A stretch of 64,000 nt of DNA from Gnetum montanum (Eukaryota; Plantae; Gnetophyta), in contig MNCI01002384.1 of assembly GCA_015680685.1 (NCBI GenBank), positions 736,493 to 800,492 of the forward strand, given 5' to 3'. The position numbers were made by a program, and so were the translations under genes. Shown here piece by piece: positions 7,621-64,000 of this stretch (its first letter is position 1; each line of letters starts with the position of its first letter). The notes below the pieces were generated by a model. The model was not told where the DNA came from. It saw nothing but the letters and a program-made list of their open reading frames with translations, and ran no database searches.

Positions 7621-9797
7621 ATGTTATATAAAAACCTAGCCTAGGGTCCTAGCCTATACTAATAGGACAAAATTAAATGGACCAAGAAGTCAACAAGCAT
7701 GAAACTACTATTTCCTAGAAATCTAGCATATACAATTTTGTAGATCTAAAATTTGGTAAACTAGACATAGGAAAATTGGTCAAAACCATGAAGGATCCTA
7801 CTAGATCGTAAGCTAGGAAGGTTATTGCTAAGACATAACCACTAAAATAGTTACCCCCATTTTTCTTCTTGTTTGTTTATCCTTTATTTAGCATTCACAT
7901 GAATTTTATATTCTTAGTTAGGAGTTACAAATTTTTAATTTATGATCCTTTTTTAGGTAACAATAACATTGGAAAATTATTTTAGTGGTTTCTCAATCTT
8001 GAGGGTTTCTAGCAAATTTTTTGTAGTATATTTTTTCTTCTTTTTACTTAATAGGGAATGATCTAAAGATGGAAAGTACTAATGGCTCTCAGACTATAAA
8101 GACTATGAAGAATCTTCAAGATTTTAATTCTATTTTATTTGATGATTTATATGAATTCCTATCAAAAGATATCTCATCATAATACATATTTCTATAGATT
8201 ATTGAATTTTTTTATCAAAATGTGGGCTTTACACAAATGATTCAAGAAATTCTTGAACACTATGAAAGTAATTTTTTACATGCTCACTATTTTTTGAAAT
8301 CTTTTTTGCTTCTCAAACTTGCCAACTCTGAAATGGTAGATAAATCATTGGATCTTAAAGTTTCTATAAATCAACATAATACTTTTATTGATAAAAAATG
8401 GAAAGTATAACTTGATTCATATTATTCTGATTATTCTAAAATTCATTGCTATATTAAATTAGAAAGTCTTCCTCTAAATTTGTCAAAGTGTTGGAAATAA
8501 AATTATTGGCAACATTAGCATAATCCTGAAGACAAAGTCAAAAACATTACTAAAAGGTATGTAGTGCATATGTGTTTTTATAGAGATTAATGTATTGCAA
8601 AATAAAATAGAATTAAAACTCAAGGTTAGTGTTGGCGACCATTTGGGACCACCAATGTTTACTTCAAGTCTCATGAATGAAATCATGGAAAACAAAGGTC
8701 TTCCTTCAAACTTGAGTTAAGGTGTTTACTCATCTCTAGAAACACCAAGGCCTAGATACCTCCAAATAAACTCAGTGGGAATAGAGCAAAGTAAGCATAA
8801 ATGTGTATTTGCTGTTATGATTGTTGAAATGTGTGGGTTTGTGTATGGAACTATAACTAACTATTATAATAGAATTTTAGCTAACCTTGTTGAATACTGT
8901 GAGTTATTAAAGATTCCTATTTTATAAAGTCACTTATTCTATATAGTTCCTATAGTATGTTGCTTGAAATAAATAAAATTTCACCAAAATTGTTAAGCAC
9001 AATTCTACAGAAATCTACTCCTAAATTTCCCCTGAGAGAAAAGTCTACAAGAAAAACAAAAATAGAGTGAGATTCAATGGATTTTAAAAGAAAAAAGAGA
9101 GAGAAGGCAAATTTTTATGGAATCTCAAACATTTAAGTGAGATAAAATGAACATGAGGAAGCACTTCAAAATAAAGTTATTTCAATTCAATATAAAGTGT
9201 TACAAATTGACCAATCCCTCTGAGCTCAACAAGCAATTTCATAAAAGAAACTTCTATTAAACTACCAAAATGCTTTGTAAAAGATAAAATACAAGCTATT
9301 ATATGGCTAGTTAATTGTTGTCAATAATTGCAAGAATAGAGCTATCTGAAAAGGTATAAAAATTTCAAGATTGAACATGATAAAAAAAATTATAATTGAA
9401 TCTACTTCAAGTTAGCTCAAAATATCAAATATTTTCTAAATCCTCTAGACTTGATCAAGAAATTTAATAAAGACATTACTACTAAATTGCTCAAGATGCT
9501 TTTCAAAGGAAAATATAAGCTCTTACATGGCTAACTAATAGAAGTCTAAAATTGCAAGAAAACAGAGCTATAAGAGCAATCAAAAAATTCCAAAATTAAA
9601 TGCCAAACATAGTACTATATAAACTATTAGCTAAGAAGCTAAGAAAAAATGAGAATAAAAGAACTCATGGGATTTAAATAAAGAGCTGAATTGATGATGC
9701 AATTAGCAAGCCATTCTTACAAATAATCTTCAATATTTTTTTCAAGTTCTTCATCCTTTTCATTCTACCCTTGAAGCTCTTTTTATAGTGGCTTCTT

Positions 9798-10010
9798 GGT
9801 AGTTACAACATCATGGGAAATTAAAATTAGTTATAATCACTATAGGAATTTATTTACAACTACAATAGAAATTAAATACTATAGTTGCCAAGTGTCATGT
9901 TCGGTAGTTACAACATCATGGGAAATTAAAATTAGTTACAACCACTATGAGAATTTAGTTACAACTATCATAGAAATTAAATGCTATAGTTTCCAAGTGT
10001 CCTGTTCATA
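9798..10010. repeat. ~105-bp tandem duplication in solo LTR
   Basis: ggtagttacaacatcatgggaaattaaaattag at 9798 and 9903. Confidence 0.9.
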
Positions 10011-10239
10011 TAGGAAATTGGATAACTTTCCTATAAATCCTTTACATTTTAAGCTCCTTCAATGATAACCACATTCTCTTAAGAGAGCATGGTTCATTGA
10101 ATTTAGTTTTAAAGCTATTTAATTTCTAACAACTAAGTAACTTCTTGTAATACCATGCTTTTTAATGATTTGATTCAATGCACTAAGACCAATGTGCTCT
10201 TTAATGAGGCTAGAATGTGGCCTCATGAATGAGCTCTAT

Positions 10240-10900
10240 GTGTTGACGTGATAGGTTGTTGATGTGATGGTGATGACATGGTGCTATGCTAAGGTGGTAG
10301 AGCTAGTTCATGATACTAAATTTTATCTTTACAAAATAGCTATGCATGCTAACATGGCATAGTGTTGATGTCATGATGATGTCACTTACATTGTCATGGA
10401 ATATACTAATGTGTCAGAGATTACGTGGAAGAGCTGATTTTTAGAGGATAAATTTCACCCTTCAAACTAGCTTGAAAAGCTAATGTGGTAAAAAGCTGAA
10501 GTGGCATGGTCATCATGGCACTAATGACATGGTTAAGTAACCTTATAGGACTGAATTTCTACTTCACAACCTAGCTCTATGAGTTGATGTGGCACGAAAG
10601 TCATGCTAATGTGACATATGATGATATGATAGAACATATTCATTTAGCTAGTAATCATTTTGATGAGCCACCTCTAGAAGTTGACATGGTAGCTTGCCAA
10701 CATCATAATGACATGCTAAAAGCTGACATGGCAATGTTGATCTGGTATGCTAACTTGGCCTCATGTTGATGTGGCATATGCTGATGTCATGCTGACATTT
10801 GTAGAAGATGATGTGGTAGATGAAGCAAAAAACTCATCTAGATATAAAAAATGAGCTTAATCTAAATGCTAATGTGGTAGCTTGCCACATGGCAGAATGG
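10240..10900. promoter_or_regulatory. Dispersed array of deaminated TGACGTGG(C) ACGT-box motifs in U3
   Basis: Many tgacatgg / tgatgtgg / taatgtgg copies, with intact ACGT cores at ~10245 (tgacgtga) and ~10422 (tacgtgg). Confidence 0.6.
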
Positions 10901-39020: not shown

Positions 39021-39281
39021 TACCCCCATGACTAAATAAAAACTCATCCTCGAGTTAAAGTGAGAACAAGCTCTATTGATTACATAGTGGATAGGTATGG
39101 GATTATTGACTGGTGAGAATGGATTCATGCCACAGTATGGAATTAGAAAAAAATTGAGACACAACATGGGGAATGTGAAAGAAAATACTATAACTACAAA
39201 ATTGATGGAACTCATGTAGTTCTTGGTGGCAGTGGCTCCTCCATGGGTGCCTTTCCCTTGTCTTATGCTTCAGGTCTTGGT

Positions 39282-41097
39282 TGAAACACTCTAAAATTTC
39301 GAGACCCTCTTGCTTCACCAGGGTCTTAGAATCTAGGCAAGGGATTTTCGCAAGTGCAGCATCACAACAGTTTGGCAGGAAATAAATGCTCTGAGTTTAG
39401 ACTATCTAGTTCAGCAAATTTTCTACTTCCAGTGTTGACAGGCCCGACGGACTCTCCAGCCTACCCACCTGGACCATTCACTTAGCTAACAGCCTACTCA
39501 AAAACCATGTGTGGTGTTGTTGGTAGTGCTTAGGCTGCCCAAAATAGTTCGGCAAGTTTTTTAGCATAGCAAACCTCAAAAGACAATTGCTAAGATGATG
39601 AAGTACAAACTGTTGTAGAATAGATTGCTACGCTATGCTATGCTACACAACGTAGCACAGTGTAGCAAAAGGCAAGACAGAAAGGTCCAACTTACCTAGT
39701 GATTCCAATTCACTCAGCAAGAATTTTGGCCTTCAAAACCAGTTGCCTTGATTGACTTCAAGTCCTTTAGCAAGATCTCTTACTAGAAAGTGGCAGACTG
39801 AACAAAGAAGTAGGATTAGCTGGCTGCTATGCTATGCTACACTGTGTAGCGTAGCACAGTGTAGTGATAATGCAAGAGCAGCAAGAAAGGCTTCAAGTGC
39901 AAGTTCAGTAGGTTCAAAGCCTCCCCTTCACAAAAGGCAAAAGTTGTAGTTGTTAACATGGTAAAAAATTTAAACAAGTGTTTGTAACTTTAACACGAGT
40001 TGTAGATGAGGTTGTTGCTACGATATGCTACGCTACGTAGCGTAGCATAGTGTAGCAAGGATGAAAGTCAAACAAAGTGCTGTGAAAGTTACATCGATGT
40101 GCGCCAAAGTTTCTGGCAGATGTGGTTAACTTTAACACCAATTTCTTCTTCAAACTGGTGGCTACGCTATGCTATGCTGCATAGTGTAGCACAGCGTAGC
40201 AAGCTACTATGCTACAACAACATGCTATGCTACATTATGTAGCACAGCGTAGTAGGCAACTACGCTACTTCAGTGTGCATCATTCCTCATATGCATTGTT
40301 GGCATACTTGATTCTAGCATCTCTAGTTTTGACAGTGTAATTGCAGGGTGGTAGGCTTATCAATCAGCTTTGCATGTTCATGCAGCATGGACACGTCAAC
40401 ATCTTGCAGGTCCAGAACATGTGGCATTCAGGCTACATTTCTCGTGTGCTCCTAGCCCTATAAATACCCCAATGAGAAATGCTCAAAGGGTTAGCAAAAG
40501 AATTATTGGTTAGAAAAAATTAGTTAGCAAATTTGAGCAGGGTTGGCAACTCTGAGCATTGTTAGCATTTGTTGTTGACAAATTGGCAAAAATTAAAATG
40601 GTTGGCATTTTCACTCAGCATTCTATTAGCTCCTTTCCATTGTCTTTGTAGCACTTTGCATTGTTGGCTTTTGAGTCCATGTTCAAGAATATAGTTGGCC
40701 TTCTTTGAACACTCTGGTTACCTTTGGTATCTCTGTGCTTCCAAATGTTGCGCAACTGATTGTATCCACTTCAACAAAGTAAAGCCACGATCTTGAGGCT
40801 GTGCATTCCCTAACTCTTATTCACTTTAAATTCCTGCTCATTATTATTGCATTTTACATCATTTTTCTCTTTGTTGCATTTATTAATTTGTATATTACGT
40901 TACAAACATTGCTTCCACATTACACGTTTACGAAAGGTTAAGTGACACCGACTAAGTCCCTGTCTGATCGACTAAACCGTTTAGGGCACCCCATTTCTAT
41001 TTTTAATCTAGCACAACCCTCGCATAGATCCAAGGTTAAGACTGTTCACCTAATAACCTCTCAGTGTTTCCAGCCACTGACGTTTTCAGTCACTACA
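39282..41097 (+). repeat. 5' LTR of Tat element
   Basis: TGAAACACTC...TCACTACA; collinear with 60201-62042; CCTATAAATA ~40457. Confidence 0.93.
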
Positions 41098-41103
41098 GTT
41101 TTC

Positions 41104-41120
41104 TGGCACTAGAAGGAGGG
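41104..41120 (+). other. PBS, probably complementary to tRNA-Asn(GUU)
   Basis: TGGCACTAGAAGGAGGG (consensus TGGCGCTAGAAGGAGGG with CpG>CpA); tRNA identity from recalled plant tRNA-Asn 3' end. Confidence 0.72.
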
Positions 41121-50870: not shown

Positions 50871-53494
50871 GTAGCAAATTTCACGTTACATTTTTATAAT
50901 TAATTCAACTGAACCTTGAGTCAATAAACTGGGGATCATCCATAGAAAGCACTGTAGCTTCGTTGGAAACATCCCCAGACTAGCCTAAAAGTCTGGTCAA
51001 AGCCCTAGATTTAGAGGCCGAGGATGTAACTGAGGACCCTCTCATTAAGATACCTGTGACCACATCCAGGGGGGAGATAAAAATGTTAAAACTTAGCTCC
51101 CTCCTAGATTCATAGACGCACAAAGATGTAGCCAAAGTATTGCAGAACAACATCAAAGTATTCGTTTGGTCTTATAACTACATGCCGGGTTTAGACCCAA
51201 GGCTCATACAACACAACATTGTCTTAGATCCATGGATGAAAGCAGTGAAGCAGAAGGCTTGCATGGTTAAACCAGAGATCGCACTAGCCATACGGGATGA
51301 AATCACCAAGCTCTATTAGGCTGGTTTCATTTAGGTAGATGATTACTCAGAATGGGTGTCAAACATCGTCATAGTTTCTAAGAAAATGGGAGGGATATGT
51401 ATCTGTATAGACTTCTAGGATCTGAACAAAGCCATAATAAAGGATGACTTCCCACTACCGAGTATTGATCAACTTATTGACACTACGGTTGGTCATGCTC
51501 TATTATCCTTCATGAATGGTTTCTCCAGCTACAACCAAATTTACATCAACCAAGAGCATCAGTTAACAACAACCTTCATGACCCCATGGGGGACTTTTTG
51601 TTATACTATGATGCCCTTTGGGCTCAAAAATGCTGAAGCAACCTACCAGTGAGCCATGACATACATCTTTAGCGACTATATCTTAGAAATGCTAAACGAC
51701 TACATGGATGACATAGTGGTGAAATCTAAAGAAGTTGTTGATCATCCCAATGATATAGGTGTAGTCCTAAAGTGTTGCCAGATGCACGATTTATGCCTTA
51801 ACCCAAAGAAGTGTGTCTTCGGGGTGAAAATCAGACTCATGTTAGGGTTTGTAGTATCGGAGGTTGGAATACGAGTGGACCTTGACAAAGTCAAGACCAT
51901 CGTTAACTTAGCACCACCTACAAATCTTAAGGAATTACATGGGTTACAAGGTAGAGTACAGTTCATCAAAAGGTTTATAGCAAAGTTGACTGACAAGTTA
52001 CATCCCATGAAACATCTACTAAAGAAAGGGATTAACTTCTAATGGACAACACAATGCCAACAAGACTTTGATGATCTAAAGGAAGAGCTTTTACACCTCC
52101 CAACTGTTTACCCACCATAGAGGGATAAGCCTTTCTTCATCTACCTTGCCATGTCAGACGCATCTATCACAACACTATTATGTCAGAAATAAGATGATGG
52201 CTCTAAAATTCTAGTGTACTACCTAAGTCATGCATTGGTAGCGTATGAGGCAAGATACAATGAGGTGGAAAGAAACTTCCTTGCCTTAGTGTTTGTGTTA
52301 AAGAAGTGGAGGCATTACTTGTTTCACAGTAAAGTTAACATTATATGCAAGAGCAATGTAATCCAGGCTATCACAAATAACCTATATGAAAGTAGAAGGA
52401 TAGCCTAGTGGAAAGCCATAACAACGAAATTCGATTTGCATTATGTGAGCCAATCATCAAAAAAGGGTCAAGCTATGATAACGCAACTTACGATCTTGCC
52501 CGTCGACGATCAGGCAATCATAGATCCCAAATTCCCTGACGAGCATGTTAGCACTATCAATGCTATCCCATCGCATCTTGAAGCTACTTTGCACTTCGAT
52601 GGTGCCTCAACCATGTGAGGGGGTAGTGCAGCTGCTGTCATTGCATTCCCCTTTGGGGAAATGCAACCTTTTGCTTATCATTTTGGGTTTCCTTGTACAA
52701 ACAAAGTGGAAGAGTATGAAGGGTTACTCAGGGGCCTCTTAGCAGCCCAAGAATTAAGCATACAACACCTAGTGATTCACGGAGATTCACAACTTTTTGT
52801 GAATCAAATCACCTAAGTCTACACCTAGAAGGTTACACATCTACAGCCCTACTGCGACCTAGTGAAAAGCCTACTCAAAACTTTTGCAACAACGGACGTA
52901 CAACATGTGCCATGCAACAAAAACACCATAGCAGATGCCTTGGCCACCCTAGCATTAATCGTGTCATCACACCTATTTGCAAATTTTCCAAGTTTGATTA
53001 CTGAGTTTACGGAGCCTATCACTCAGGCAGTACACGTAGCCTTTGTTAGCGTTGCAGATACCCAGGAGTGGTACACCAACATTAAAACCTACCTGCAACA
53101 CAGTGAACCCCCAAGCAGATTGACATCTGCCTAGAGAGATGTGATCCACAAGCATGCTTGATAATACGTGCTCATGGGAGACAATGCCCTATGTAGATGC
53201 TCCTTTGATAGGATATTGCTAGCATGCGTAAATGAGGAGTAAGTGCAAAAGGTCGTTAATAAGGTACACAAGGGACTATGTGGTGGACACATAGCACCTA
53301 GGGCCATGGCTACAAAAATTAGGCACCTAGGGTACTATTGGCCTCACATGGAGCATGATTGGCTAACCAAAGTAGAGACTTGTGATACGTTCCAAAGATA
53401 TGCAAATCTCATATATGTTTCACCTATAGAGTTGCATCCAACGTAGATCACATGGCCTTTCCAACGATGGGGACTAGACATCATAAGACCTATC

Positions 53495-56400
53495 TGTTGG
53501 CACATTTGGCCATTTCATGGAATAGTAGGAATATCTTATCCAAAATTGGAACATCGTATGTTTGAAAATTTAGAAGTAAACATGTAGCTTTAAGGTTATG
53601 GGTTGATGGGTGTTTTGGAGAAGTTATTTACTGTTAAATAAAATGATGTTGAGACCAACTTGGGATACAAAATTAAAGTGCCAGATTATTCCTTTATCTT
53701 AGATTGGAAGATAGTACAATAGCAAACAAGGAATTATATTATTTACCCTGATGAAAGCATTGATCATACTTTAGATCGAAGGAAGACTTATGAAGGCAGG
53801 CCTTCTTATTGGTCAAGTAAAGGATTAGTTGATACAAAGGCTCCTGAGACATTGACATACAGGATGCACACAAACTTGTCGATCATACATGAAGTTCAAA
53901 TACGACCCTTTAAAGCTTATTTTCATAGGGGATCTCTAATATATTCAGCCATGAAAATTCATTTTCACTTTGGGCATTGGGCTTCATCATTTTAAAAAGA
54001 AGAGGAGACTCTAGCTAATACAACTAAAAAAGAAGGGAAGACTCTAGCTGATGCAATTGATAAATCATCATCGGAAAAATACATTTAGACTTATGTGTTA
54101 CCAGAATATGCCATGCTTTAGGAGGACAAGTTGTAGGCTTTCACACTTCCTCACCCAGTATTATGCATTGGAAACATACTGCAAATTGAACTCACGGGAA
54201 GGGTTCAAGTTTAGGAATTTGACGGACTATATTATATCTGCATATGCCATGTGCATGTTGTTGGGAGACCCATTTCAACCTTGGACTTTGCTTTTATTGA
54301 GCATTCAAGAAAGTATGTCTTAACAAATTATGAAGAGCAACATCCTCTTGCGGATTTTAAGAATGCATCTTTCGTTGACATGGATGAAGATGAAGATAAT
54401 TCTATCAAACAAGACACCCAAATCAGAGCTAGGAGGATTCACAGAATGCTACATCATATAACAATGGCAGATTTAAATGGTGATTATTAGTTGGAATTGG
54501 ACAATGAAGATTTTCTCCTTTAAGTTCATATGAGATTCATTCAGCCATGGTTATGTGAAGGTTGATATATTTGACTTTTTCCTGTTATCAAATGTCATCA
54601 ACGGCATCATTATCCTCCTAGGATGTGAACTTAGAGTGGATACACTTTTCTTTTGTGTAGTCTTTAGTTTCTGCTTGTTTAATTTTATTAGGCTATTTCA
54701 TGCACCTTGTGAAAGTACCCAGTTGGGAAACATTGGATGAATGGCTGTTACATGAACCCAAACTGCAGCAGACTAGAAATAAAATGCTCTCCAATCTTTG
54801 CTCTATGGGCAAATCCCATACCAAAATCCAAACTAGGATATTATACAAATTCAAATCATTTACTATAGACATTCTGTCGAACACTTGCTGCATCTAGGGA
54901 AAAATGCCAAAACCCTAGCTCACGCAGTTGTTGGCAACACAAACAGAACCCAAACTGTACAGGTGTATAGCAAATTTATAGGCCTCCATCAACGACATCG
55001 TGCTCATGGACGACAACATCGGTGCTTTCACCATGGCATGAGCACGATGCGCTAGGGCATGTGCACCGCTGGAAGGTCTATGATTTTTGGCAGCATTTTG
55101 CTGGCCATGATCGAAGGCGACAGTGGAGAGGGAGGCAGCGGCACCAGCACGCTGTTATTTATGTACACTGACAAAAACACGCGGCCGCGGTGGTCATGAA
55201 AATGGGTACAAAGGACTCTATCGATGTTTGTCGTTGAGAACGATACCCTTAGCCCAGTCTTTATAGCCAATCTCCTGTGATAGATATTTTTCAATGAATT
55301 CCACCAGGATTGAAACAAAAATGGATATAAAAAACATTCGTCTCTGCCTGGCCGCGGCCGCGATATGGTGTTATTGAGGTAAGTCTAATAATAATAAAAT
55401 CCCACTATTTCCTGGGCAAAGGCTACCATGGTAGCAGTTACGCTGAACTAGCTGCTGCTTGTGAAGTCTGAAGCGAGTCCCCCACCGCTGCACCAGTCTT
55501 CAAGGTTTCTGGTTTTCAATGCCATTGGTGGAGGATGGGCTTGAATCCCTTATTCTTGAACGTCTGTCCATGGACTATAGAAAAAATAGAAAAATCTAAG
55601 CTTGGATTCACTGTGTTTTTAGTAGGAATTATTTCAGCAAAATTTTTGAATCAATATGTGGAGGTCCCACTGTTTATGTCGGAATTATTATTGGATATAA
55701 CTACCATGGCATAGCATTTCATTTTAATACATTTTGCAGGTTTAAACCCTTCAACTTGCAGATGATTTGGACAAACAGAGGTTGATGGCAGGCAAGAAAT
55801 AAACCATGGGTCCCAAGCATAAGATAGATGGACAAATATTACACATGTACATATATATTTATATATTAACCCATCCATGTATGGAAAAACTCCATGGTTA
55901 CTATCTCTCTATCACTATGATTTAGATAAAATTTTCATGATTTAGAAAGGAAAAGAAAATTTAAAGGACTTTTGTATAACATCATTTGTAAAGAAGACAT
56001 TTGGCTATTATCCCTTTTATTCCTATGGAAGTTGTAACTTCCTATGATAGTTACAACTATAATATTTATAACTAATTTTAATTTGGATTATCATGAAGAC
56101 ACTTGGCAACTACATGGGACACTTATCAACTGTAGCCTTTTTTATCTCTATAGTGGTTACAAACATCCAAGATTTTTTGTAACTTACCTAACTTGTTGGG
56201 CAAGTAACCTCTTAACTTGTTGGCCAAGTTACTTGGGAGAGAAGTTAGGTAAGATATTTTTGAATATGTAACTACCTTTGAACTTTATAAAAAGGCTTCA
56301 GGGGTAAGAAGAGATATCATCACTTGAGGTCTCACACATCACACTTGGGATCTTGGAAGATTTGTAAAGAAGATTGCTTATTAAAGAAAAGATTTCAGCC

Positions 56401-57478
56401 TCTTTGTCATGGTCCTGTGAGTTATGTATTTTATTTTTTATTTTGTTTAAATTGTTTAGCTAGTGGTTTAGATAGTATCATCCTTGGCAAGTAATTTTGG
56501 GATTTTTAGATTGCTCTTATTGTTCTTGTTGCCCAATAGAAAATTTTTGTTAAAATTTTGCCATGGAAGTGCTTGTGTTTAAAAGCCTTAAGAGCATTTT
56601 AGTAGTAAATTTTGTTATTGTGCAACGTATAAGAACCACTATTGGGATTGTTGTAAGAGAGCCTCTATTTGTAGTCATGCTGTTGAACGATTCAATAGTC
56701 AAGAGGGTTCTATAAATCTTTGGTATTTTGATGGGACCAGAATAGCTTCTTTTTATCTTTAAAGTGAATCTCCATGGTATTTCAATTAGAAATTTTCAGG
56801 TCTTTTGAAGGTTCTATTGAATGCAATTGTTGACGTCCATTATCTAGCCAAAATGGAGTCTCGTACGTGGTATTTTACGTAGCAATTTTTTGGTAGCATA
56901 GTAGGATTGTCTTGAAGAAATTGCTTATTTGAGCCTTGGAAGTTTGAACAATTCATAGATATTTAATTTGGGATAGCTTTATTGCGAAGTGTTTACTCGT
57001 GTCATTTTACCTTGTTTAAATATTTGAGGTCTACACAAATCTACTTTTCTTTTCTGTTTATTTCCATCGAATCTTACTCTATTTCTAGTTTTCTTGTGGA
57101 ACTATCTCTTCTCTTAGGAAAATTAGAAGTAGATTCGCAGAGTTGTGCTCAAATGTTTTTGCAAAATTTTATTTGTTACAAGTAGGTATTATAAGGACCA
57201 CGTAGACTAGGCAGTTGAACAAAATAGGAAACTTTCAACAACTCATAGTACTTGGCAAAGTTGGCTGAATCTCTTTAAAGTAAGTCATTTGTAGTTTACA
57301 CACAATGCAATCGCTTCATTTTTCCCAACCGCACGCTGCAACAGCACACACACATACTCACATTAACTACTGAGTTTATTTGGAGGTATCTGGGCCTTGG
57401 TGTTGCCAGAGACCAACAGGCACCTAAATCCTATTCGAGAACACTCGTTGGTGGTCGTGTCCCAAACGGTCGCCAACA
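53495..57478 (+). mobile_element. 3.98-kb solo LTR inserted in integrase
   Basis: TGTTGGC...GCCAACA inverted termini; perfect TSD CTATC (53490-53494 / 57479-57483); integrase rejoins in frame when it is removed; no PBS/pol inside; TATAAAAAG ~56286. Confidence 0.92.
53702..54523 (+). pseudogene. Captured F-box gene fragment (At4g00755-like C-terminal domain), intron-free, in LTR U3
   Basis: Single frame: YPDESIDHTL..RPSYWSSKG..APETLTY..IHEVQIRPFKAYFHRGSLIYSA..FHFGH..YI*TYVLPEYAML*EDKL*AFTLPHPVLCIGNILQIELTGRVQV*EFDGLYYICICHVHVVGRPIS. Confidence 0.85.
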
Positions 57479-58309
57479 CTATCACACCTAAGTCTTCCGC
57501 AGGGCATAGTTTCATCATCACCACCACCGAGTATTTTACAAAGTGGGTGGAGGCTATTCCCCTAAGGAAGACTGCATCCCAACAGGTTTTCCACTTCATC
57601 TTAGATAACATCGTGACAAGGTTTGGGCTTCCCATGACTATTGTGATCGACAATGGGCCACAGTTCAGTAGTGCGGAAACCAAAACCTTCTGTAGCAATC
57701 TTGACATTAGGAAATCATTCTCCTCGCCATACTACCCATAGGCAAATAGACAAGTAGAAGCTACGAACAAGTCCATCATCAACTTGCTTAAGAAAATGCT
57801 TAACAATAATAAGAGAAGATGGCACAAGCAAATCCTCTATGTGTTGTGGGCTTACAAGATGATGTGCAGGACTACAATAGGTAAGACACCTTATAGTCTT
57901 CTTTATGGATCTGAAGTGATGTTACCTCTTGAGCTGTAGGTACTATTACTTCGAATGATCCTGTCAAACATCTTGAGCGAATCCCAGAACAACGAGTCAA
58001 GGATCATTGACCTCGACTCAATAGAGGAGGAGCACACACAGAAACCTGGTCGCATAGGGAAATATTAGAATAAGCAACAGTAGAAGCATCATGAAAACCC
58101 TTGTCAATGTCCAATACAAAAGGGATACCTCATTCTGAAGGCTGTCTATGAGCATATGAACAAATTCTCAGCAAACTGAGAAGGTCCATTCATGATCACA
58201 AAAGCCTTTGGGAACAGGGCCTTCAAGCTAGCAGACATGGATGACAACGAGTTTGTAAATCCTGTGAATCATTCATACCTCAAGCCATACTAGACTTGAT
58301 GCAAGTGTA

Positions 58310-58810
58310 AGGCAAGCAAAATATCTGCTATGATGTAAAATTGGCAAAGGTAAGCAATCATGTGCTATGACGTAAAATTTGCAAAGCTTGTCCGCTACGA
58401 TGTAAAACTGGCACAGATCGTCTCCTACGATGTAAAACTGGCCAAGGTAGTCTGCTATGACTATAAACTGGCACAGACTATCCATCATGATGTAAAACTG
58501 GCCAAGCACATCTGCTACAATGTTAAACTGACATAGATGGTTTGCTATGACTTTAAATTGGCCTATCCACCATCCACTATGATGTTAAAGTAGCACTACA
58601 GTCTGCTAGGAACTTAAACTAGCATAGGCACCATCTGCTATGATGTTAAACTAGCACTACGGTCTACTAGGGCCTTAAACTAGCACAACGATCATCTGCT
58701 ATGACGTTAAACTAGGACAACAGTTTGCTAAGACCTTAAACTAGTGCACCACGGTCTACTGAGACCTTAAACCAGCACATCAGATGGTCTACTAGGACCT
58801 TAAATTGGGT
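58310..58810. repeat. 3' UTR tandem array (~30-40-bp units CTGCTAYGAYGTAAAACTGGC grading into GACCTTAAACTAGC)
   Basis: About 14 visible copies right after the integrase stop. Confidence 0.9.
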
Positions 58811-60187: not shown

Positions 60188-60200
60188 AAAGAGGGGCCAA
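60188..60200 (+). other. PPT of Tat element
   Basis: AAAGAGGGGCCAA directly before TGAAGCACCC. Confidence 0.85.
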
Positions 60201-62042
60201 TGAAGCACCCTAAAATTTTGAGATCCTCTTACTTCACCAGGGTCTTTGAATCCAGGCAAGGGATTTCCACAAGTGTGGTGTCACGATAGTTTGATAGGAA
60301 ATGAATGCTTTGAGTTTAGACTGTCCAGTTCGGTAAATTTTCTACTTCCAGTGTTGATAGACCCAATGAACTCTCTAGCCTGCCCTCCTGGACCATTCAC
60401 CCAGCTAACAGGCTACTCAGTAACCATGCATGAAGTTGTCGGCGATGCTCAGGCTATGTAAAATAGTTTGACAATTTTTCTAGTGAAGAAGTTTGCTACG
60501 CTATGCTATGCTATGTAGTGTAGGAGGCCTCAAAAGATAGTTGCTAAGGTGATCAAGTACAAAATATTGTAGAATAGACCGCTATGTTATGCTACACTAC
60601 GTAGCATAGCACAACGTAGCAAAAGGTAAGACAGAAAGGCCCAAATTACCTAGTGATTCCAATTGCACTTGGCAAGCATTCCAGCCTTCAAAACTAGTTG
60701 CCTTGATCAACTTCAAGTCCTTCAGCAAGATCTCTTACTAGAAAGTGGCAGATTGAACAAAGAAGCAGGATTAGCTGGATGCTATGCTATGCTATGCTAC
60801 ACAGCGTAGCATAGCATAGCGACAATGCAAGAGTAGCAAGAAAGGCTTCAAGTGCAAGTTTTGCAGGTTCAGAGCCTCCTCTTAGCAAAAGGCAAAAGTT
60901 GTAGCTGTTAACATGGTCAAAACTTTAAACAAGTGTTTGCAACTTCAACATGAGTCGTAGATAAGGTTGCTACTATGCTATGCTATGCTACGTAGCATAG
61001 CATAGTGTAGCAAGGATGCAAGTCAAACAAAGTGTTGCGAAAGTTAAATCGATGTGCGCTGAAGCTTTCGGCAGATACGGTTAACTTCAATGCCAATTTC
61101 TTCTTCAAACTGGTGGCTACACTATGGTATGCTACATAGCGTAGCAAGCCACTACGTGATGCCAACATGCTATGCTACATTGTGTAGCAAAGCGTAGTAG
61201 GAAGCTATGCTACTTCAGTGTGTTTCATTCCTCATCTGCATTGTTGGCATACTTGATTCCAGCATCTCCAGTTTTGACAGCGTAATTGCAGGGTAGTAGG
61301 CTCATCAATCAGCTTTGCATGTTCATGTAGCATGGACACATCAACATCTTGTAGGTCCAGGACATGTGGCATTCAGGTTGCATTTCTCATGTGTTCCTAG
61401 TCCTATAAATACCTTGAAAAGCAATGCTCAAAGGGTTAGCAAAAAAATTGTTGGTTGGCAAAAATTGGTTAGCAAATTTGAGCAGGGTTGGAAAATTTGA
61501 GCATTGTTAGCATTCGTTGTTGACAAATTGGAAAAAATTAAAATGGTTGGCATTTTTGCTCGACATTCTATTAGCTCCTTTTTGCTATCTTTTTAGCACT
61601 TTGCATTGTTGGCTTTTGAGTCCACGTTCAAGAATATAGTTGGCCTACTTTGAATGCTCTGGTTACCTTTGGGATCTCTGTGCTTCCTAGTGTTGCACAA
61701 CCAATTGTATCCACTTCAACAAAGTAAAGCTGTGATCTTGAGGTGGTGCATTCCCTAACTCTTGTTCACTTTAAATTCCTGCTCATTATTATTGCATCTT
61801 ACATCATTTTTCACTTCGTTGCATTTATTAATTTATATATTACGTTACAAACATTGCTTCTACATTACACGTTTACGAAAGGTTAAGTGACACTGACTAA
61901 GTCCCTGTTTGATCGACCGGACCATTCAGGGAATCCCATTTTCATTTTTAATCCAGCATAGCCCTCACACAGATCCAAGGTTAAGACTGTTCGCCCGATA
62001 ACCTCTCAGTGTTTCTAGCCACCAACGGTTTCAGTCACTACA
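60201..62042 (+). repeat. 3' LTR of Tat element
   Basis: Collinear with 39282-41097. Confidence 0.93.
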
Positions 62043-62047
62043 TTGGG

Positions 62048-64000
62048 ACTTGATGGCGTTGAAGTATGACTTGGAGTTTCTCCTCTTCGGTTTGGGGATC
62101 CTGTGTCATCCATGCCAATGTTCCAATGTTTGATGGAGTTGGCACCTCCCATGGGAAAGGTAGTTATGGAAATATTTTGTTTGCTTTGACATACCAGGCT
62201 GCAAACACTTGCTGTTCCTCCTCATAAGCTCTGGCTTTGTCTCTGTATTCTTGAAAATCTGCAAGCCGTTGAGCCAAGTCTATTGCAATACCTTTTTGCC
62301 CCTGGTAGCTTGCTTTAACCACCTCAAGTTCAGAATTTGCAACCTCCAATTTTTGCAATATCTTCTTGCGTTCTGCAAATTCTATTTCATATTTGATGTA
62401 GGTGGTGGCTACCCATTGCTTGAGCTCTGTTCTCAGGCACCATGCTATTAACATGGCAAGGTTGGAATACCGTAGGTTTGCCAACTCCATGTATTCTGTA
62501 AGGTCTTGGATCTGTAGGTCCTAGTTCTTAACTTCTGCCTAGTGGGCAAATGCATATGTGTCCAATATGGCTCGCTAGTCAGTGTGTTGAGCACTGAGAG
62601 TGTTGATGTGGGCCTTGGCCATATGGATCTCCTTCTCAATGATCTATTTATATATCCCCACCTGGTCTAGAAAGTGCTCCTTTAGATTTTCATGCTATTT
62701 AGCCTCATTTTGCCACGCGCTTATTTCAATAGTCATCTTTTGACGAATGGTGCATACCTTCTACATTGAGAGGGTTCGATTTTTCCTGGCTAAATAGTTC
62801 ATGTCCTAGTTGACCCTGATGAGTTGTTCTCACAACTGTTGAAAATGTTCTTCGAGAACATTCTTTTGCTTCTCCACAGAGGTCAACCGAAGGTTGTCAG
62901 CAAAAATTTGCTTGTTTTCCTCTTGTAAGGCCTTGAGTGCCTTAGTATGCACATAAGTTTGTGCTTTTGCCTTAGAGGCATCCCAAACAACCTTCTCTTT
63001 TTCTTCTGTCACCTTCTTATTCTCCATCAATAGTTTGGTTAGTTGCTTAGTTTTGAAAGTGTCCAGTTGGTCTACGGGAACAAACTGAGAAGGATCCCGC
63101 TGTGTTGCTTGTAGGATCATGAGCCTTTCTTGAAATTTTTGCACCTTTGTTTCAGCGTGCTTGGCCCTCATCTTTGTTAAGACCAGCCTCCCTTTGGTGG
63201 AAATGAGGTCTGATTGGATTGCTGTAACATCCTATGGGATGTCAAACAAGGACATCATTACTTGTCCTATTTATAGCAATTAGTCAAGTACATCCTCATG
63301 TTTCATAGGAGTCATTGAGATTCCAGCCAGAGTTTGAGCATCCCATGCTCTTATAAGATTTGGTGGTGGCACAATAGGTACATTGAACGATTCTTTAATG
63401 TGGTCTGCGACCACTTTTGTGGCTCCTGCTACATCCTGGTGCTGCATGACCACCATTGTGGCCCCTTCACTAGTTTCTAATTGCACTTGAAATGATCCAG
63501 TGTTCCCTGAGATCTATTGTGACCAAGTGCTCTCCTCTCCTCCTATATGGATGGACACTTCATCCCTTGCACAATCCAAAGAAACTGTGGGCTATATGGC
63601 ATCATCGATGATGAGGAAGAGATTTGCATCATCGATTCCCCAACTGACCATCTTAGCGATGGCCTTGAGATGGCTCATCAACGGTCTATAATCTTATAGC
63701 AGTGGTGGTGGTTGATCCTACTAGCTCATGCTAGGCCCTGCTTCTTGTTGTTGGTTGGGTCCCATGCTTGGAAGTTGGCTAGGTCCTACAAGTTGAGTTG
63801 TAGTTGGCCCTGCCATTTGTTCCTTTTCTTGTTCTAGACCTAGTGTCTCACCAGTGATTTTCCTTGCAGCTGGTAGCTTTAGCAATTCATCATATGAAGA
63901 ATTTTAGGCTTTTTAGAGGACAACATTGGTGTATCCTCTAATACTAGCACATTGGCATAGCTTCCTGATAAGACAAGGGAAGGACAACACAAGCTTCCCT
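62048..64000 (-). pseudogene. 3' extra ORF (coiled-coil, env-like position) of the Athila-like element; continues at 39276-39212
   Basis: Same-strand ORF pieces 63280-63486, 62830-63171, 62164-62490; across the Tat TSD it reads ..LQRHQVPRPEA*DKGKAPMEEPLPPRTT* just upstream of the PPT/LTR. Confidence 0.65.

What the first reader, a model, noticed from the sequence alone, without database searches (positions are those of the whole stretch)
53495..54523. Host F-box (At4g00755-like) coding sequence captured inside an LTR U3
Seen: ~820 bp (53702-54523) in one frame, with no frameshift or intron, starting ~200 bp into a TSD-flanked solo LTR and upstream of the LTR TATA (~56286). The stops in the conserved part sit where Trp/Gln are expected (TGG/CAG>TAG), consistent with post-insertion deamination. 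Established (recalled motifs): SYWSSKG, PETLxY, IxPFxAYF..IYSA, LPxPVLCIG, IELxGRVQ, YICxxHVxVVGRP characterise At4g00755-like F-box proteins. The F-box motif itself is missing or degraded, and a segment before YPDESI appears deleted. Inference: RNA-mediated transduction into the LTR, so every insertion would copy it twice; it could produce siRNAs against the host gene or a truncated substrate-binding decoy.
Basis: partly seen in the sequence, partly recalled or inferred. Interest (0 to 1): 0.82.

Follow-up and report, generated by a model that had tools for sequence, protein, structure and literature searches.

The report
Dead F-box gene piece inside LTR
A leftover end-repeat (solo LTR) of a plant retrotransposon carries a dead, intron-free, front-truncated copy of an ordinary F-box gene, which is a common kind of gene-fragment capture in large plant (probably conifer) genomes.

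Summary
Window 53744-54520 reads in one frame, without frameshift or intron, as residues ~125-394 of the 'F-box protein At4g00755-like' family (family HMM 248 bits, E 5e-77). Its best matches are gymnosperm proteins at 47-52% identity.

The F-box domain and linker (HMM 1-126) are absent. Six premature stops break the frame, and five are TAG at conserved Trp/Gln codons.

The fragment lies 232-250 bp inside a 3984-bp unit (53495-57478). The unit has TGTTGGC...GCCAACA ends and a 5-bp duplication (CTATC), and it splits a gypsy integrase precisely. A related LTR elsewhere in the window shares the TATA-to-end core, so a solo LTR is the best reading.

At least three or four intron positions conserved in the family are missing, so the copy came from spliced RNA. 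It has no poly(A) tail or flanking duplication of its own. It is about 27% diverged at sites fixed in gymnosperm mRNAs, versus at most ~8% allowed since the insertion. It therefore most likely arrived here as an already decayed passenger of the LTR.

Copy number and presence in both LTRs could not be tested. A decoy protein is excluded for this copy, and siRNA cross-talk is untested.

Earlier notes of this scan describe similar gene-carrying LTRs on other DNA of this genome. Verdict: a new member of a known, very common kind; low interest.

The parts
53490..53494 (.). Left copy of the 5-bp target-site duplication CTATC
   Evidence: Removing the unit plus one copy restores the integrase reading frame ...DIIRPI|TPKSS....
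53495..57478 (+). Solo-LTR-like unit of 3984 bp, with TGTTGGC...GCCAACA termini and no internal long direct repeat
   Evidence: The TATA-to-end core is colinear with a second LTR tail in the window.
57479..57483 (.). Right copy of the target-site duplication CTATC
53726..54523 (+). Intronless, 5'-truncated, decayed copy of the C-terminal two-thirds of an At4g00755-like F-box protein (family HMM 124/127 to the natural stop). The robust part is 53744-54520.
53994..54059 (+). 33-bp tandem duplication (1.9 copies) inside the variable loop of the fragment
54086..54214 (+). Cluster of four TAG stops (54086, 54119, 54134, 54212) at family W, Q, Q, Q codons. Further stops are at 53993 (TAA) and 54488 (TAG, a Q position).
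54929..54936 (+). Second copy of the LTR's first 8 bases (TGTTGGCA). With 53495-53502 it brackets the 1434-bp block that holds the fragment. Its meaning is unclear.
   Evidence: chance about 0.05
55443..55470 (+). 28-nt stretch, 27/28 identical to the 3' end of plant rbcL, in a GC-rich patch of the same U3
56000..57478 (+). Conserved promoter-to-end core of the LTR, with the TATA box at 56286-56293
53243..53494 (+). Upstream half of the interrupted Ty3/gypsy integrase of the host element (H2C2 zinc domain)
   Evidence: PF17921, E 5e-8
57484..57738 (+). Downstream half of the interrupted integrase (rve core, profile positions 22-102)
   Evidence: PF00665, E 3e-14
8630..10250 (-). Related LTR tail. 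It has the same ...GGTCGCCAACA end and the same TATA context, and is 65-75% identical to 56000-57478. It shares nothing with the 5' 2.5 kb of the unit.
39274..41104 (+). 5' LTR of the old host element that the unit is nested in. Its partner is at 60193-62053; p = 0.138, K2P = 0.158.

Best explanation
A spliced mRNA of a host At4g00755-like F-box gene was copied, without its 5' third, into the 5' part of U3 of an LTR retrotransposon. The donor belongs to the gymnosperm 'clade B' paralogue. The most likely route is reverse-transcriptase template switching inside the virus-like particle. From then on the fragment was non-coding cargo of the LTR and decayed under cytosine-methylation-driven mutation. 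One such element later integrated into the integrase gene of an older gypsy element, making the CTATC duplication. It was then reduced to a solo LTR by LTR-LTR recombination.

Shown: the identity of the fragment, its intronless single-frame structure, its truncation and stops, the limits of the unit, and the nesting.

Inferred: that the unit is an LTR, that the fragment was already in it at integration, and the template-switch route. The fragment has no function as a protein here.
For: - Family identity.
- Spliced origin: 53 partial gene models of the family break at PFQ|A (HMM 183-187) and then read intron. At least 10 break after FPMxQ (HMM 243) and about 7 after YYI (HMM 282). The window reads straight through all these points in one frame.
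- Unit is LTR-like: TG..CA ends with a 7-bp inverted tip, a 5-bp TSD, exact restoration of the split integrase, and no internal repeat. It shares a TATA-to-end core and an identical 3' tip with a second copy.
- No signature of a separate retrocopy insertion: no 15-nt window with at least 11 A in 54500-55300, and no convincing flanking repeat.
- Age argument: 119 of 439 sites that are identical in four gymnosperm mRNAs of two paralogue clades differ in the window (27%). G>A is 25% and C>T 21%, against 8% for the reverse changes. CHG sites number 13 against 30-34. The host element's LTR pair differs by only p = 0.138, so at most about 0.07-0.08 per site can have accumulated since the unit could have landed here.
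- Literature: capture of gene fragments by LTR retrotransposons is documented (PMC2774510; review PMC13317346) and is very frequent in gymnosperms (PMC13477047).
Against: - Only one copy of this LTR could be examined, so it is not shown that other copies, or both LTRs of a full element, carry the fragment.
- The related LTR in the window lacks the whole 5' 2.5 kb, so the fragment is not a feature of the wider lineage.
- The true donor gene of this genome was not available. Part of the 27% could be donor-lineage divergence.
- The stop count alone (6) is only weakly incompatible with 7-8% decay (P about 0.05-0.12).
- The LTR tip 8-mer recurs at 54929. This could mark a separate insertion event at the DNA level.
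- The assumption of equal neutral rates in the LTR pair and in the fragment is untested.
Confidence: 0.6

Rival explanations
1. An independent processed pseudogene. A LINE-type reverse transcriptase copied the F-box mRNA, 5'-truncated, into this particular LTR copy or an immediate ancestor, unrelated to the LTR element's own replication.
For: The copy is intronless and 5'-truncated, as LINE-made retrocopies are. Other intronless, decayed copies of the same gene exist in conifer assemblies (P0004, P0312). A 10-mer AAATAAAATG occurs on both sides, at 53636 and 54777.
Against: There is no poly(A) tract anywhere in the 800 bp after the stop codon, and the 10-mer is AT-rich and has no A-tail before it. 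Decay of 27% at conserved sites is 3-4 times what the age of this insertion site allows, so it cannot have landed after the LTR integrated here.
Confidence: 0.15
2. A DNA-level acquisition. The 1434-bp block 53495-54928, or 53503-54928, entered the edge of the LTR as filler DNA during double-strand-break repair, or as another small mobile element that already carried the dead retrocopy. The repeated TGTTGGCA would be its 8-bp target duplication.
For: The LTR's first 8 bases recur exactly once, at 54929, directly bracketing the block with the fragment. The U3 also holds a 28-nt rbcL-identical snippet, as filler-DNA mosaics do.
Against: The 8-mer recurrence has about a 5% chance expectation, and similar TTGTTGGxCAAG motifs occur near the TATA. 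The block has no terminal inverted repeats. The integration-competent tip would have to be recreated exactly.
Confidence: 0.15
3. A still-functional gene piece: a truncated substrate-binding decoy protein, or a selected siRNA source against the host F-box gene.
For: The fragment covers the whole predicted galactose-binding-like/DOC-like C-terminal domain of the donor. One exact 21-mer, coding SYWSSKG, is shared with conifer mRNAs of the closest clade.
Against: There are six premature stops, and 13 of about 60 family-invariant residues are changed. There is no start codon context, and the fragment lies upstream of the LTR promoter. Overall nucleotide identity to the nearest mRNAs is about 72%, and only in two blocks.
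Confidence: 0.03

Closest known systems
Gene-fragment capture by plant LTR retrotransposons (maize Bs1; 189 captures in B73 LTR elements, PMC2774510; rice/sorghum surveys cited in PMC13317346; about 400,000 captured fragments per gymnosperm genome, PMC13477047)
   Same: A host coding fragment lies inside the boundaries of an LTR retroelement. It is spliced (RNA-derived), non-functional and single-gene, in a TE-dense giga-genome context.
   Different: Here the fragment sits inside the LTR itself (5' U3) rather than in the internal region as in Bs1. Only a solo LTR survives, so propagation could not be shown.
Foreign sequence placed into an LTR by aberrant template switching (BARE-2, Veju long form; reviewed in PMC13317346)
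   Same: New sequence lies within the LTR while the termini and the promoter-proximal core are kept. This is the proposed route here.
   Different: In those cases the inserted sequence is from another TE or is unknown, not a host mRNA. The mechanism is not demonstrated here.
LINE-mediated processed pseudogene
   Same: Intronless, 5'-truncated, decayed.
   Different: No poly(A) tail and no target-site duplication of its own.
F-box protein At4g00755 family (for example Papaver XP_026404352.1; Cryptomeria, Taxus and Picea homologues)
   Same: Homologous over the C-terminal roughly 270 residues, including all signature motifs.
   Different: It lacks the F-box domain and linker, and is broken by stops. 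It is a pseudogene fragment, not a family member in the functional sense.

Membership tests
F-box protein At4g00755-like family | Homology of the C-terminal SYWSS/PFQAYF/LPxPVLCIG/YYICxxHV domain | tested here: met
   HMM 127-346, 248 bits, E 5e-77. tblastn E 3e-66 to P0173.
F-box protein At4g00755-like family | N-terminal F-box(-like) domain (PF12937/PF00646 in the relatives) | tested here: not met
   No match to HMM 1-126 in six frames of 52500-58000. The relatives carry PF12937.
F-box protein At4g00755-like family | Intact open reading frame | tested here: not met
   Six premature stops
Solo LTR of an LTR retrotransposon | TG...CA termini with short inverted tips, flanked by a 4-6 bp target-site duplication | tested here: met
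   TGTTGGC/GCCAACA termini and CTATC on both sides. The integrase ORF is restored on excision.
Solo LTR of an LTR retrotransposon | Homology to the LTRs of a full-length element of the same family | tested here: inconclusive
   Only one related LTR tail is in the window (8630-10250, minus strand). It has the same 3' tip and TATA core, but its own 5' end and any internal region could not be found.
Solo LTR of an LTR retrotransposon | No internal LTR pair or coding domains of its own | tested here: met
   Self-BLAST finds no internal repeat. Pfam finds nothing in its ORFs.
Gene fragment captured and propagated by an LTR retrotransposon | Fragment lies within the element's boundaries and lacks the donor's introns | tested here: met
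   Position 232-1029 of the unit. Intron sites after HMM 183, about 197, 243 and 282 are all closed.
Gene fragment captured and propagated by an LTR retrotransposon | Same fragment in both LTRs, or in several copies of the family | not testable with these tools
There is no second copy in the window.
LINE-type processed pseudogene | 3' poly(A) tract followed by a target-site duplication that also flanks the 5' end | tested here: not met
   No A-rich 15-mer in 54500-55300. The best flank repeat is an AT-rich 10-mer without an A-tail.

The most novel reading that the evidence does not exclude
This LTR may belong to a family, noted by earlier readers on other DNA of this genome, in which the tips and the promoter-to-end core are constant. 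In that family the 5' U3 would be a slot that repeatedly takes up pieces of spliced host RNA. Here that would be an F-box mRNA plus a 28-nt rbcL snippet. The duplicated 8-base tip (53495 and 54929) would be the footprint of a template switch at the U3/PPT boundary that extends the LTR leftwards. That would amount to a 'Pack-MULE-like' behaviour of LTRs with a defined mechanism.
Probability: 0.15. Interest if true: 0.6.

Novelty: new member of a known kind. Interest (0 to 1): 0.25.

Why it matters
It is a clean, well-delimited example of a host gene fragment sitting inside an LTR rather than in a retroelement's interior. The molecular dating shows the cargo is much older than the insertion. On its own it changes nothing: such captures number in the hundreds of thousands in gymnosperm genomes (PMC13477047), and this copy is dead. 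It would matter only as one data point if a genome-wide survey showed that this LTR family systematically acquires spliced host RNA at a fixed place in U3.

Tried and rejected
- Pfam on all pieces of the fragment and on ORFs of the rest of the unit gave nothing beyond the flanking integrase.
- The word-index protein search with the 90-aa piece found no candidates, because of its length limit.
Intron positions were therefore inferred from read-through partial gene models instead.
- The metagenome scan returned conifer-like mRNA contigs and algal genomic contigs. There was no land-plant genomic copy and no UTR homology, so the 3' limit of the captured mRNA could not be set.
- The search for N-terminal or F-box remnants upstream of 53744 was negative, both by HMM in six frames and by DNA alignment.
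- The search for poly(A) or a TSD around the fragment was negative.
- Rfam on the unit gave nothing. The bacterial promoter/terminator scan is irrelevant here.
- A profile search of solved structures by sequence gave nothing. The rbcL-like piece gave nothing by PDB or Pfam because it is too short.
- The search for a TSD-consistent 5' end of the related LTR found none.
- Sensitive alignment of the two LTRs' 5' parts found no similarity.
- Earlier-findings look-ups by sequence were blank.

Full report
**What is there**

The open pieces between stops are 53723-53992 (90 aa), 53996-54085, 54089-54118, 54122-54133, 54137-54211, 54215-54487 (91 aa) and 54491-54520.

Pfam has no model for this part of the protein, and the length-limited word search found nothing. 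I therefore ran the 90-aa piece through the full HMMER search. It found 192 relatives at E<=1e-3 and 65 at E<=1e-10. Most are 350-420 aa, with the match at about residues 124-206.

The sources name these 'F-box protein At4g00755(-like)', for example Papaver somniferum XP_026404352.1 and Cryptomeria japonica. Many carry the Pfam F-box-like domain PF12937 at their N-terminus.

**Extent and state of the copy**

- tblastn of full-length relatives against the window gives one HSP in one frame. P0173 residues 133-382 match 53744-54511 at 47% identity, E 3e-66. P0005 residues 125-382 match at E 2e-53.
- A family HMM built from 44 full-length relatives matches positions 127-346 of 395 at 248 bits, E 5e-77. 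It finds no trace of positions 1-126 (F-box plus linker) in any of six frames of 52500-58000.
- DNA alignment to conifer-type mRNA contigs also loses all similarity upstream of 53741-53744. MAFFT suggests that 'TRN' at 53726-53734 is the family's 'TDN', followed by a 9-bp insertion.
- The C-terminal end aligns down to the natural stop region at 54521.
- The premature stops are at 53993 (TAA) and at 54086, 54119, 54134, 54212 and 54488 (all TAG). The five TAGs fall on a conserved W and four conserved Q codons.
- About 13 of 60 residues invariant from Amborella to conifers are changed.
- A 33-bp tandem duplication sits in the variable loop at 53994-54059.

**Nearest relatives**

The best hits are a gymnosperm paralogue group. 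It contains P0173, P0174 and P0175, P0181 (whose cluster holds Picea sitchensis ADE77500.1), Cryptomeria SUGI_0751730 and Taxus KI387_034361.

Nucleotide identity to their mRNAs (loci L001-L007) is about 72% in two conserved blocks and undetectable elsewhere, including the UTRs. The window is therefore probably gymnosperm DNA. The true donor gene was not available.

**Spliced origin**

I therefore used the many partial gene models in the hit list that run from an exon into an intron.
- Fifty-three models stop matching the family HMM at positions 183-187 (...PFQ|A...), and many then read 'G' followed by unrelated sequence.
- At least ten break after FPMxQ (position 243), many then reading 'V'.
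- About seven break after YYI (position 282).
- A few indicate a further boundary near IYS|AKA.

The window reads straight through all these points in one frame. The copy therefore derives from spliced RNA.

**The surrounding unit**

The fragment lies in a 3984-bp unit, 53495-57478. The unit begins TGTTGGC, ends GCCAACA, and is flanked by CTATC on both sides.
- Upstream is an integrase H2C2 zinc domain (PF17921). Directly downstream the rve core resumes (PF00665, profile 22-102).
- Deleting the unit and one CTATC joins ...DIIRPI to TPKSSAGHSF... in frame.
- The unit has no internal long repeat and no recognisable coding domain.
- Its last roughly 1.5 kb is colinear at 65-75% identity with a second sequence on the minus strand at 8630-10250. 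This stretch runs from about 280 bp upstream of a TATAAAAAGG at 56286 to the end. The second sequence has the same ...GGTCGCCAACA end.

A solo LTR is the best reading, and the fragment lies in its U3 by position. The other LTR shares nothing with the 5' 2.5 kb of the unit. Its own 5' end could not be defined.

**Passenger or later arrival?**

No poly(A) tract follows the fragment: no 15-nt window with at least 11 A exists in 54500-55300. No convincing direct repeat flanks it either.

The age comparison points the same way. The unit is nested in an older element whose LTRs (39274-41104 and 60193-62053) differ by p = 0.138, K2P 0.158. At most about 0.07-0.08 substitutions per site can therefore have accumulated since the unit could have landed here.

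The fragment, however, differs at 119 of 439 sites (27%) that are identical in four gymnosperm mRNAs from two paralogue clades.
- The bias is strong: G>A 25% and C>T 21%, against 8% for the reverse transitions.
- Only 13 CHG sites remain, against 30-34 in the mRNAs.
- A simulation with this spectrum gives six or more stops in only 5-12% of runs at d = 0.07-0.08, but in 55-95% of runs at d = 0.15-0.27.

The fragment was therefore very probably already an old, unconstrained sequence when this LTR integrated, that is, cargo of the element. This is an inference. It assumes equal neutral rates and a donor that is conserved like its relatives.

**Function**

The donor's C-terminal domain is predicted as a beta-sandwich (AlphaFold2, overall pLDDT 64, beta core 70-90). 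It resembles galactose-binding-like, discoidin, CBM32, APC10-DOC and IFT25 domains (Foldseek E about 1e-4, probability about 1.0). A substrate-binding role is plausible for the intact protein.

The copy here cannot make it: the longest open piece is 91 aa. One exact 21-mer (coding SYWSSKG, at 53804) is shared with conifer mRNAs. Small-RNA cross-talk therefore cannot be excluded, but it is untested and would be marginal.

**Context in the literature**

- LTR retrotransposons carrying gene fragments are well known. Maize B73 has 425 such elements from at least 189 captures (PMC2774510). Bs1, the rice and sorghum surveys, and LTR-internal acquisitions by template switching (BARE-2, Veju) are reviewed in PMC13317346.
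- A 2026 survey reports about 400,000 TE-captured coding fragments per gymnosperm genome, with capture events more ancient than in angiosperms (PMC13477047).
- Earlier notes of this scan, which are AI notes treated here as leads only, describe LTRs in this same genome with constant tips and core and a variable U3 made of host gene pieces. My window shows the same pattern for two LTRs and adds a 28-nt rbcL-identical snippet in the same U3.

**Unexplained**

The LTR's first eight bases, TGTTGGCA, recur once inside the unit at 54929. Together they bracket the 1434-bp block that holds the fragment. Chance expectation is about 5%. Similar TTGTTGGxCAAG dyads lie just upstream of the TATA. The recurrence could be a footprint of how the block entered, by template switch or by an 8-bp target duplication, or it could be a coincidence.

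**Limits**

No plant genome collection was searchable. Copy number, presence in both LTRs, the donor locus and the 3' limit of the captured mRNA therefore remain open. In the tools, pieces between stops were searched separately by reference. In scripts the frame was read through with X at each stop or by tblastn.

**Verdict**

Propagation is inferred, a decoy protein is rejected, and siRNA cross-talk is untested. This is a new member of a known and very common kind, of low interest.

Noticed in passing
window 55443-55470: A 28-nt stretch is 27/28 identical to the 3' end of plant rbcL (codons PELAAACEVW, with the W codon reading TGA here). It sits inside a GC-rich patch (54950-55520) of the same LTR U3. 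The exact 23-mer occurs in 15 short chloroplast-contaminant contigs of bacterial assemblies, and the L016 ORF 174-1634 is a plant-type rbcL. There is no longer homology.
   Followed up: partly
window 53495-53502 and 54929-54936: The LTR's terminal 8-mer TGTTGGCA is repeated once inside the LTR, bracketing the block that holds the F-box fragment. Chance is about 0.05. Related TTGTTGG(G/C)CAAG dyads lie at 56189-56232, just upstream of the TATA box.
   Followed up: partly
window 8630-10250 (minus strand): A second, diverged LTR tail of the same lineage has an identical 3' tip and the flank CTAAC. Neither its 5' end nor a matching target duplication was found.
   Followed up: partly
window 58333-58722: Tandem arrays with 30-bp and 61-bp periods lie just after the integrase of the host element, in its 3' untranslated part.
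   Followed up: no
protein P0061 (Adiantum nelumboides MCO5570917.1): A fern gene model fuses a chromovirus integrase core and chromodomain with an At4g00755-like stretch (residues 336-414). It is either an annotation merge or another TE-associated copy of this gene family.
   Followed up: partly
proteins P0004 (Logan) and P0312 (ENA): These are two other intronless, decayed copies of the same gymnosperm paralogue on short conifer-like contigs. Both ORFs end just before the Trp codon that is TAG at window 54086. Their flanks could not be fetched.
   Followed up: partly
proteins P0001 (Papaver armeniacum), P0002 and P0003 (Striga): Gene models with two or three tandem copies of the N-terminal part of the C-terminal domain, pointing to local duplications of this gene in some angiosperms.
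   Followed up: no
model m7bb4ec9ce523 (P0173): The family's uncharacterised C-terminal domain is predicted as a galactose-binding-like, discoidin, APC10-DOC or IFT25-type beta-sandwich. No Pfam model or solved relative is found by sequence.
   Followed up: partly
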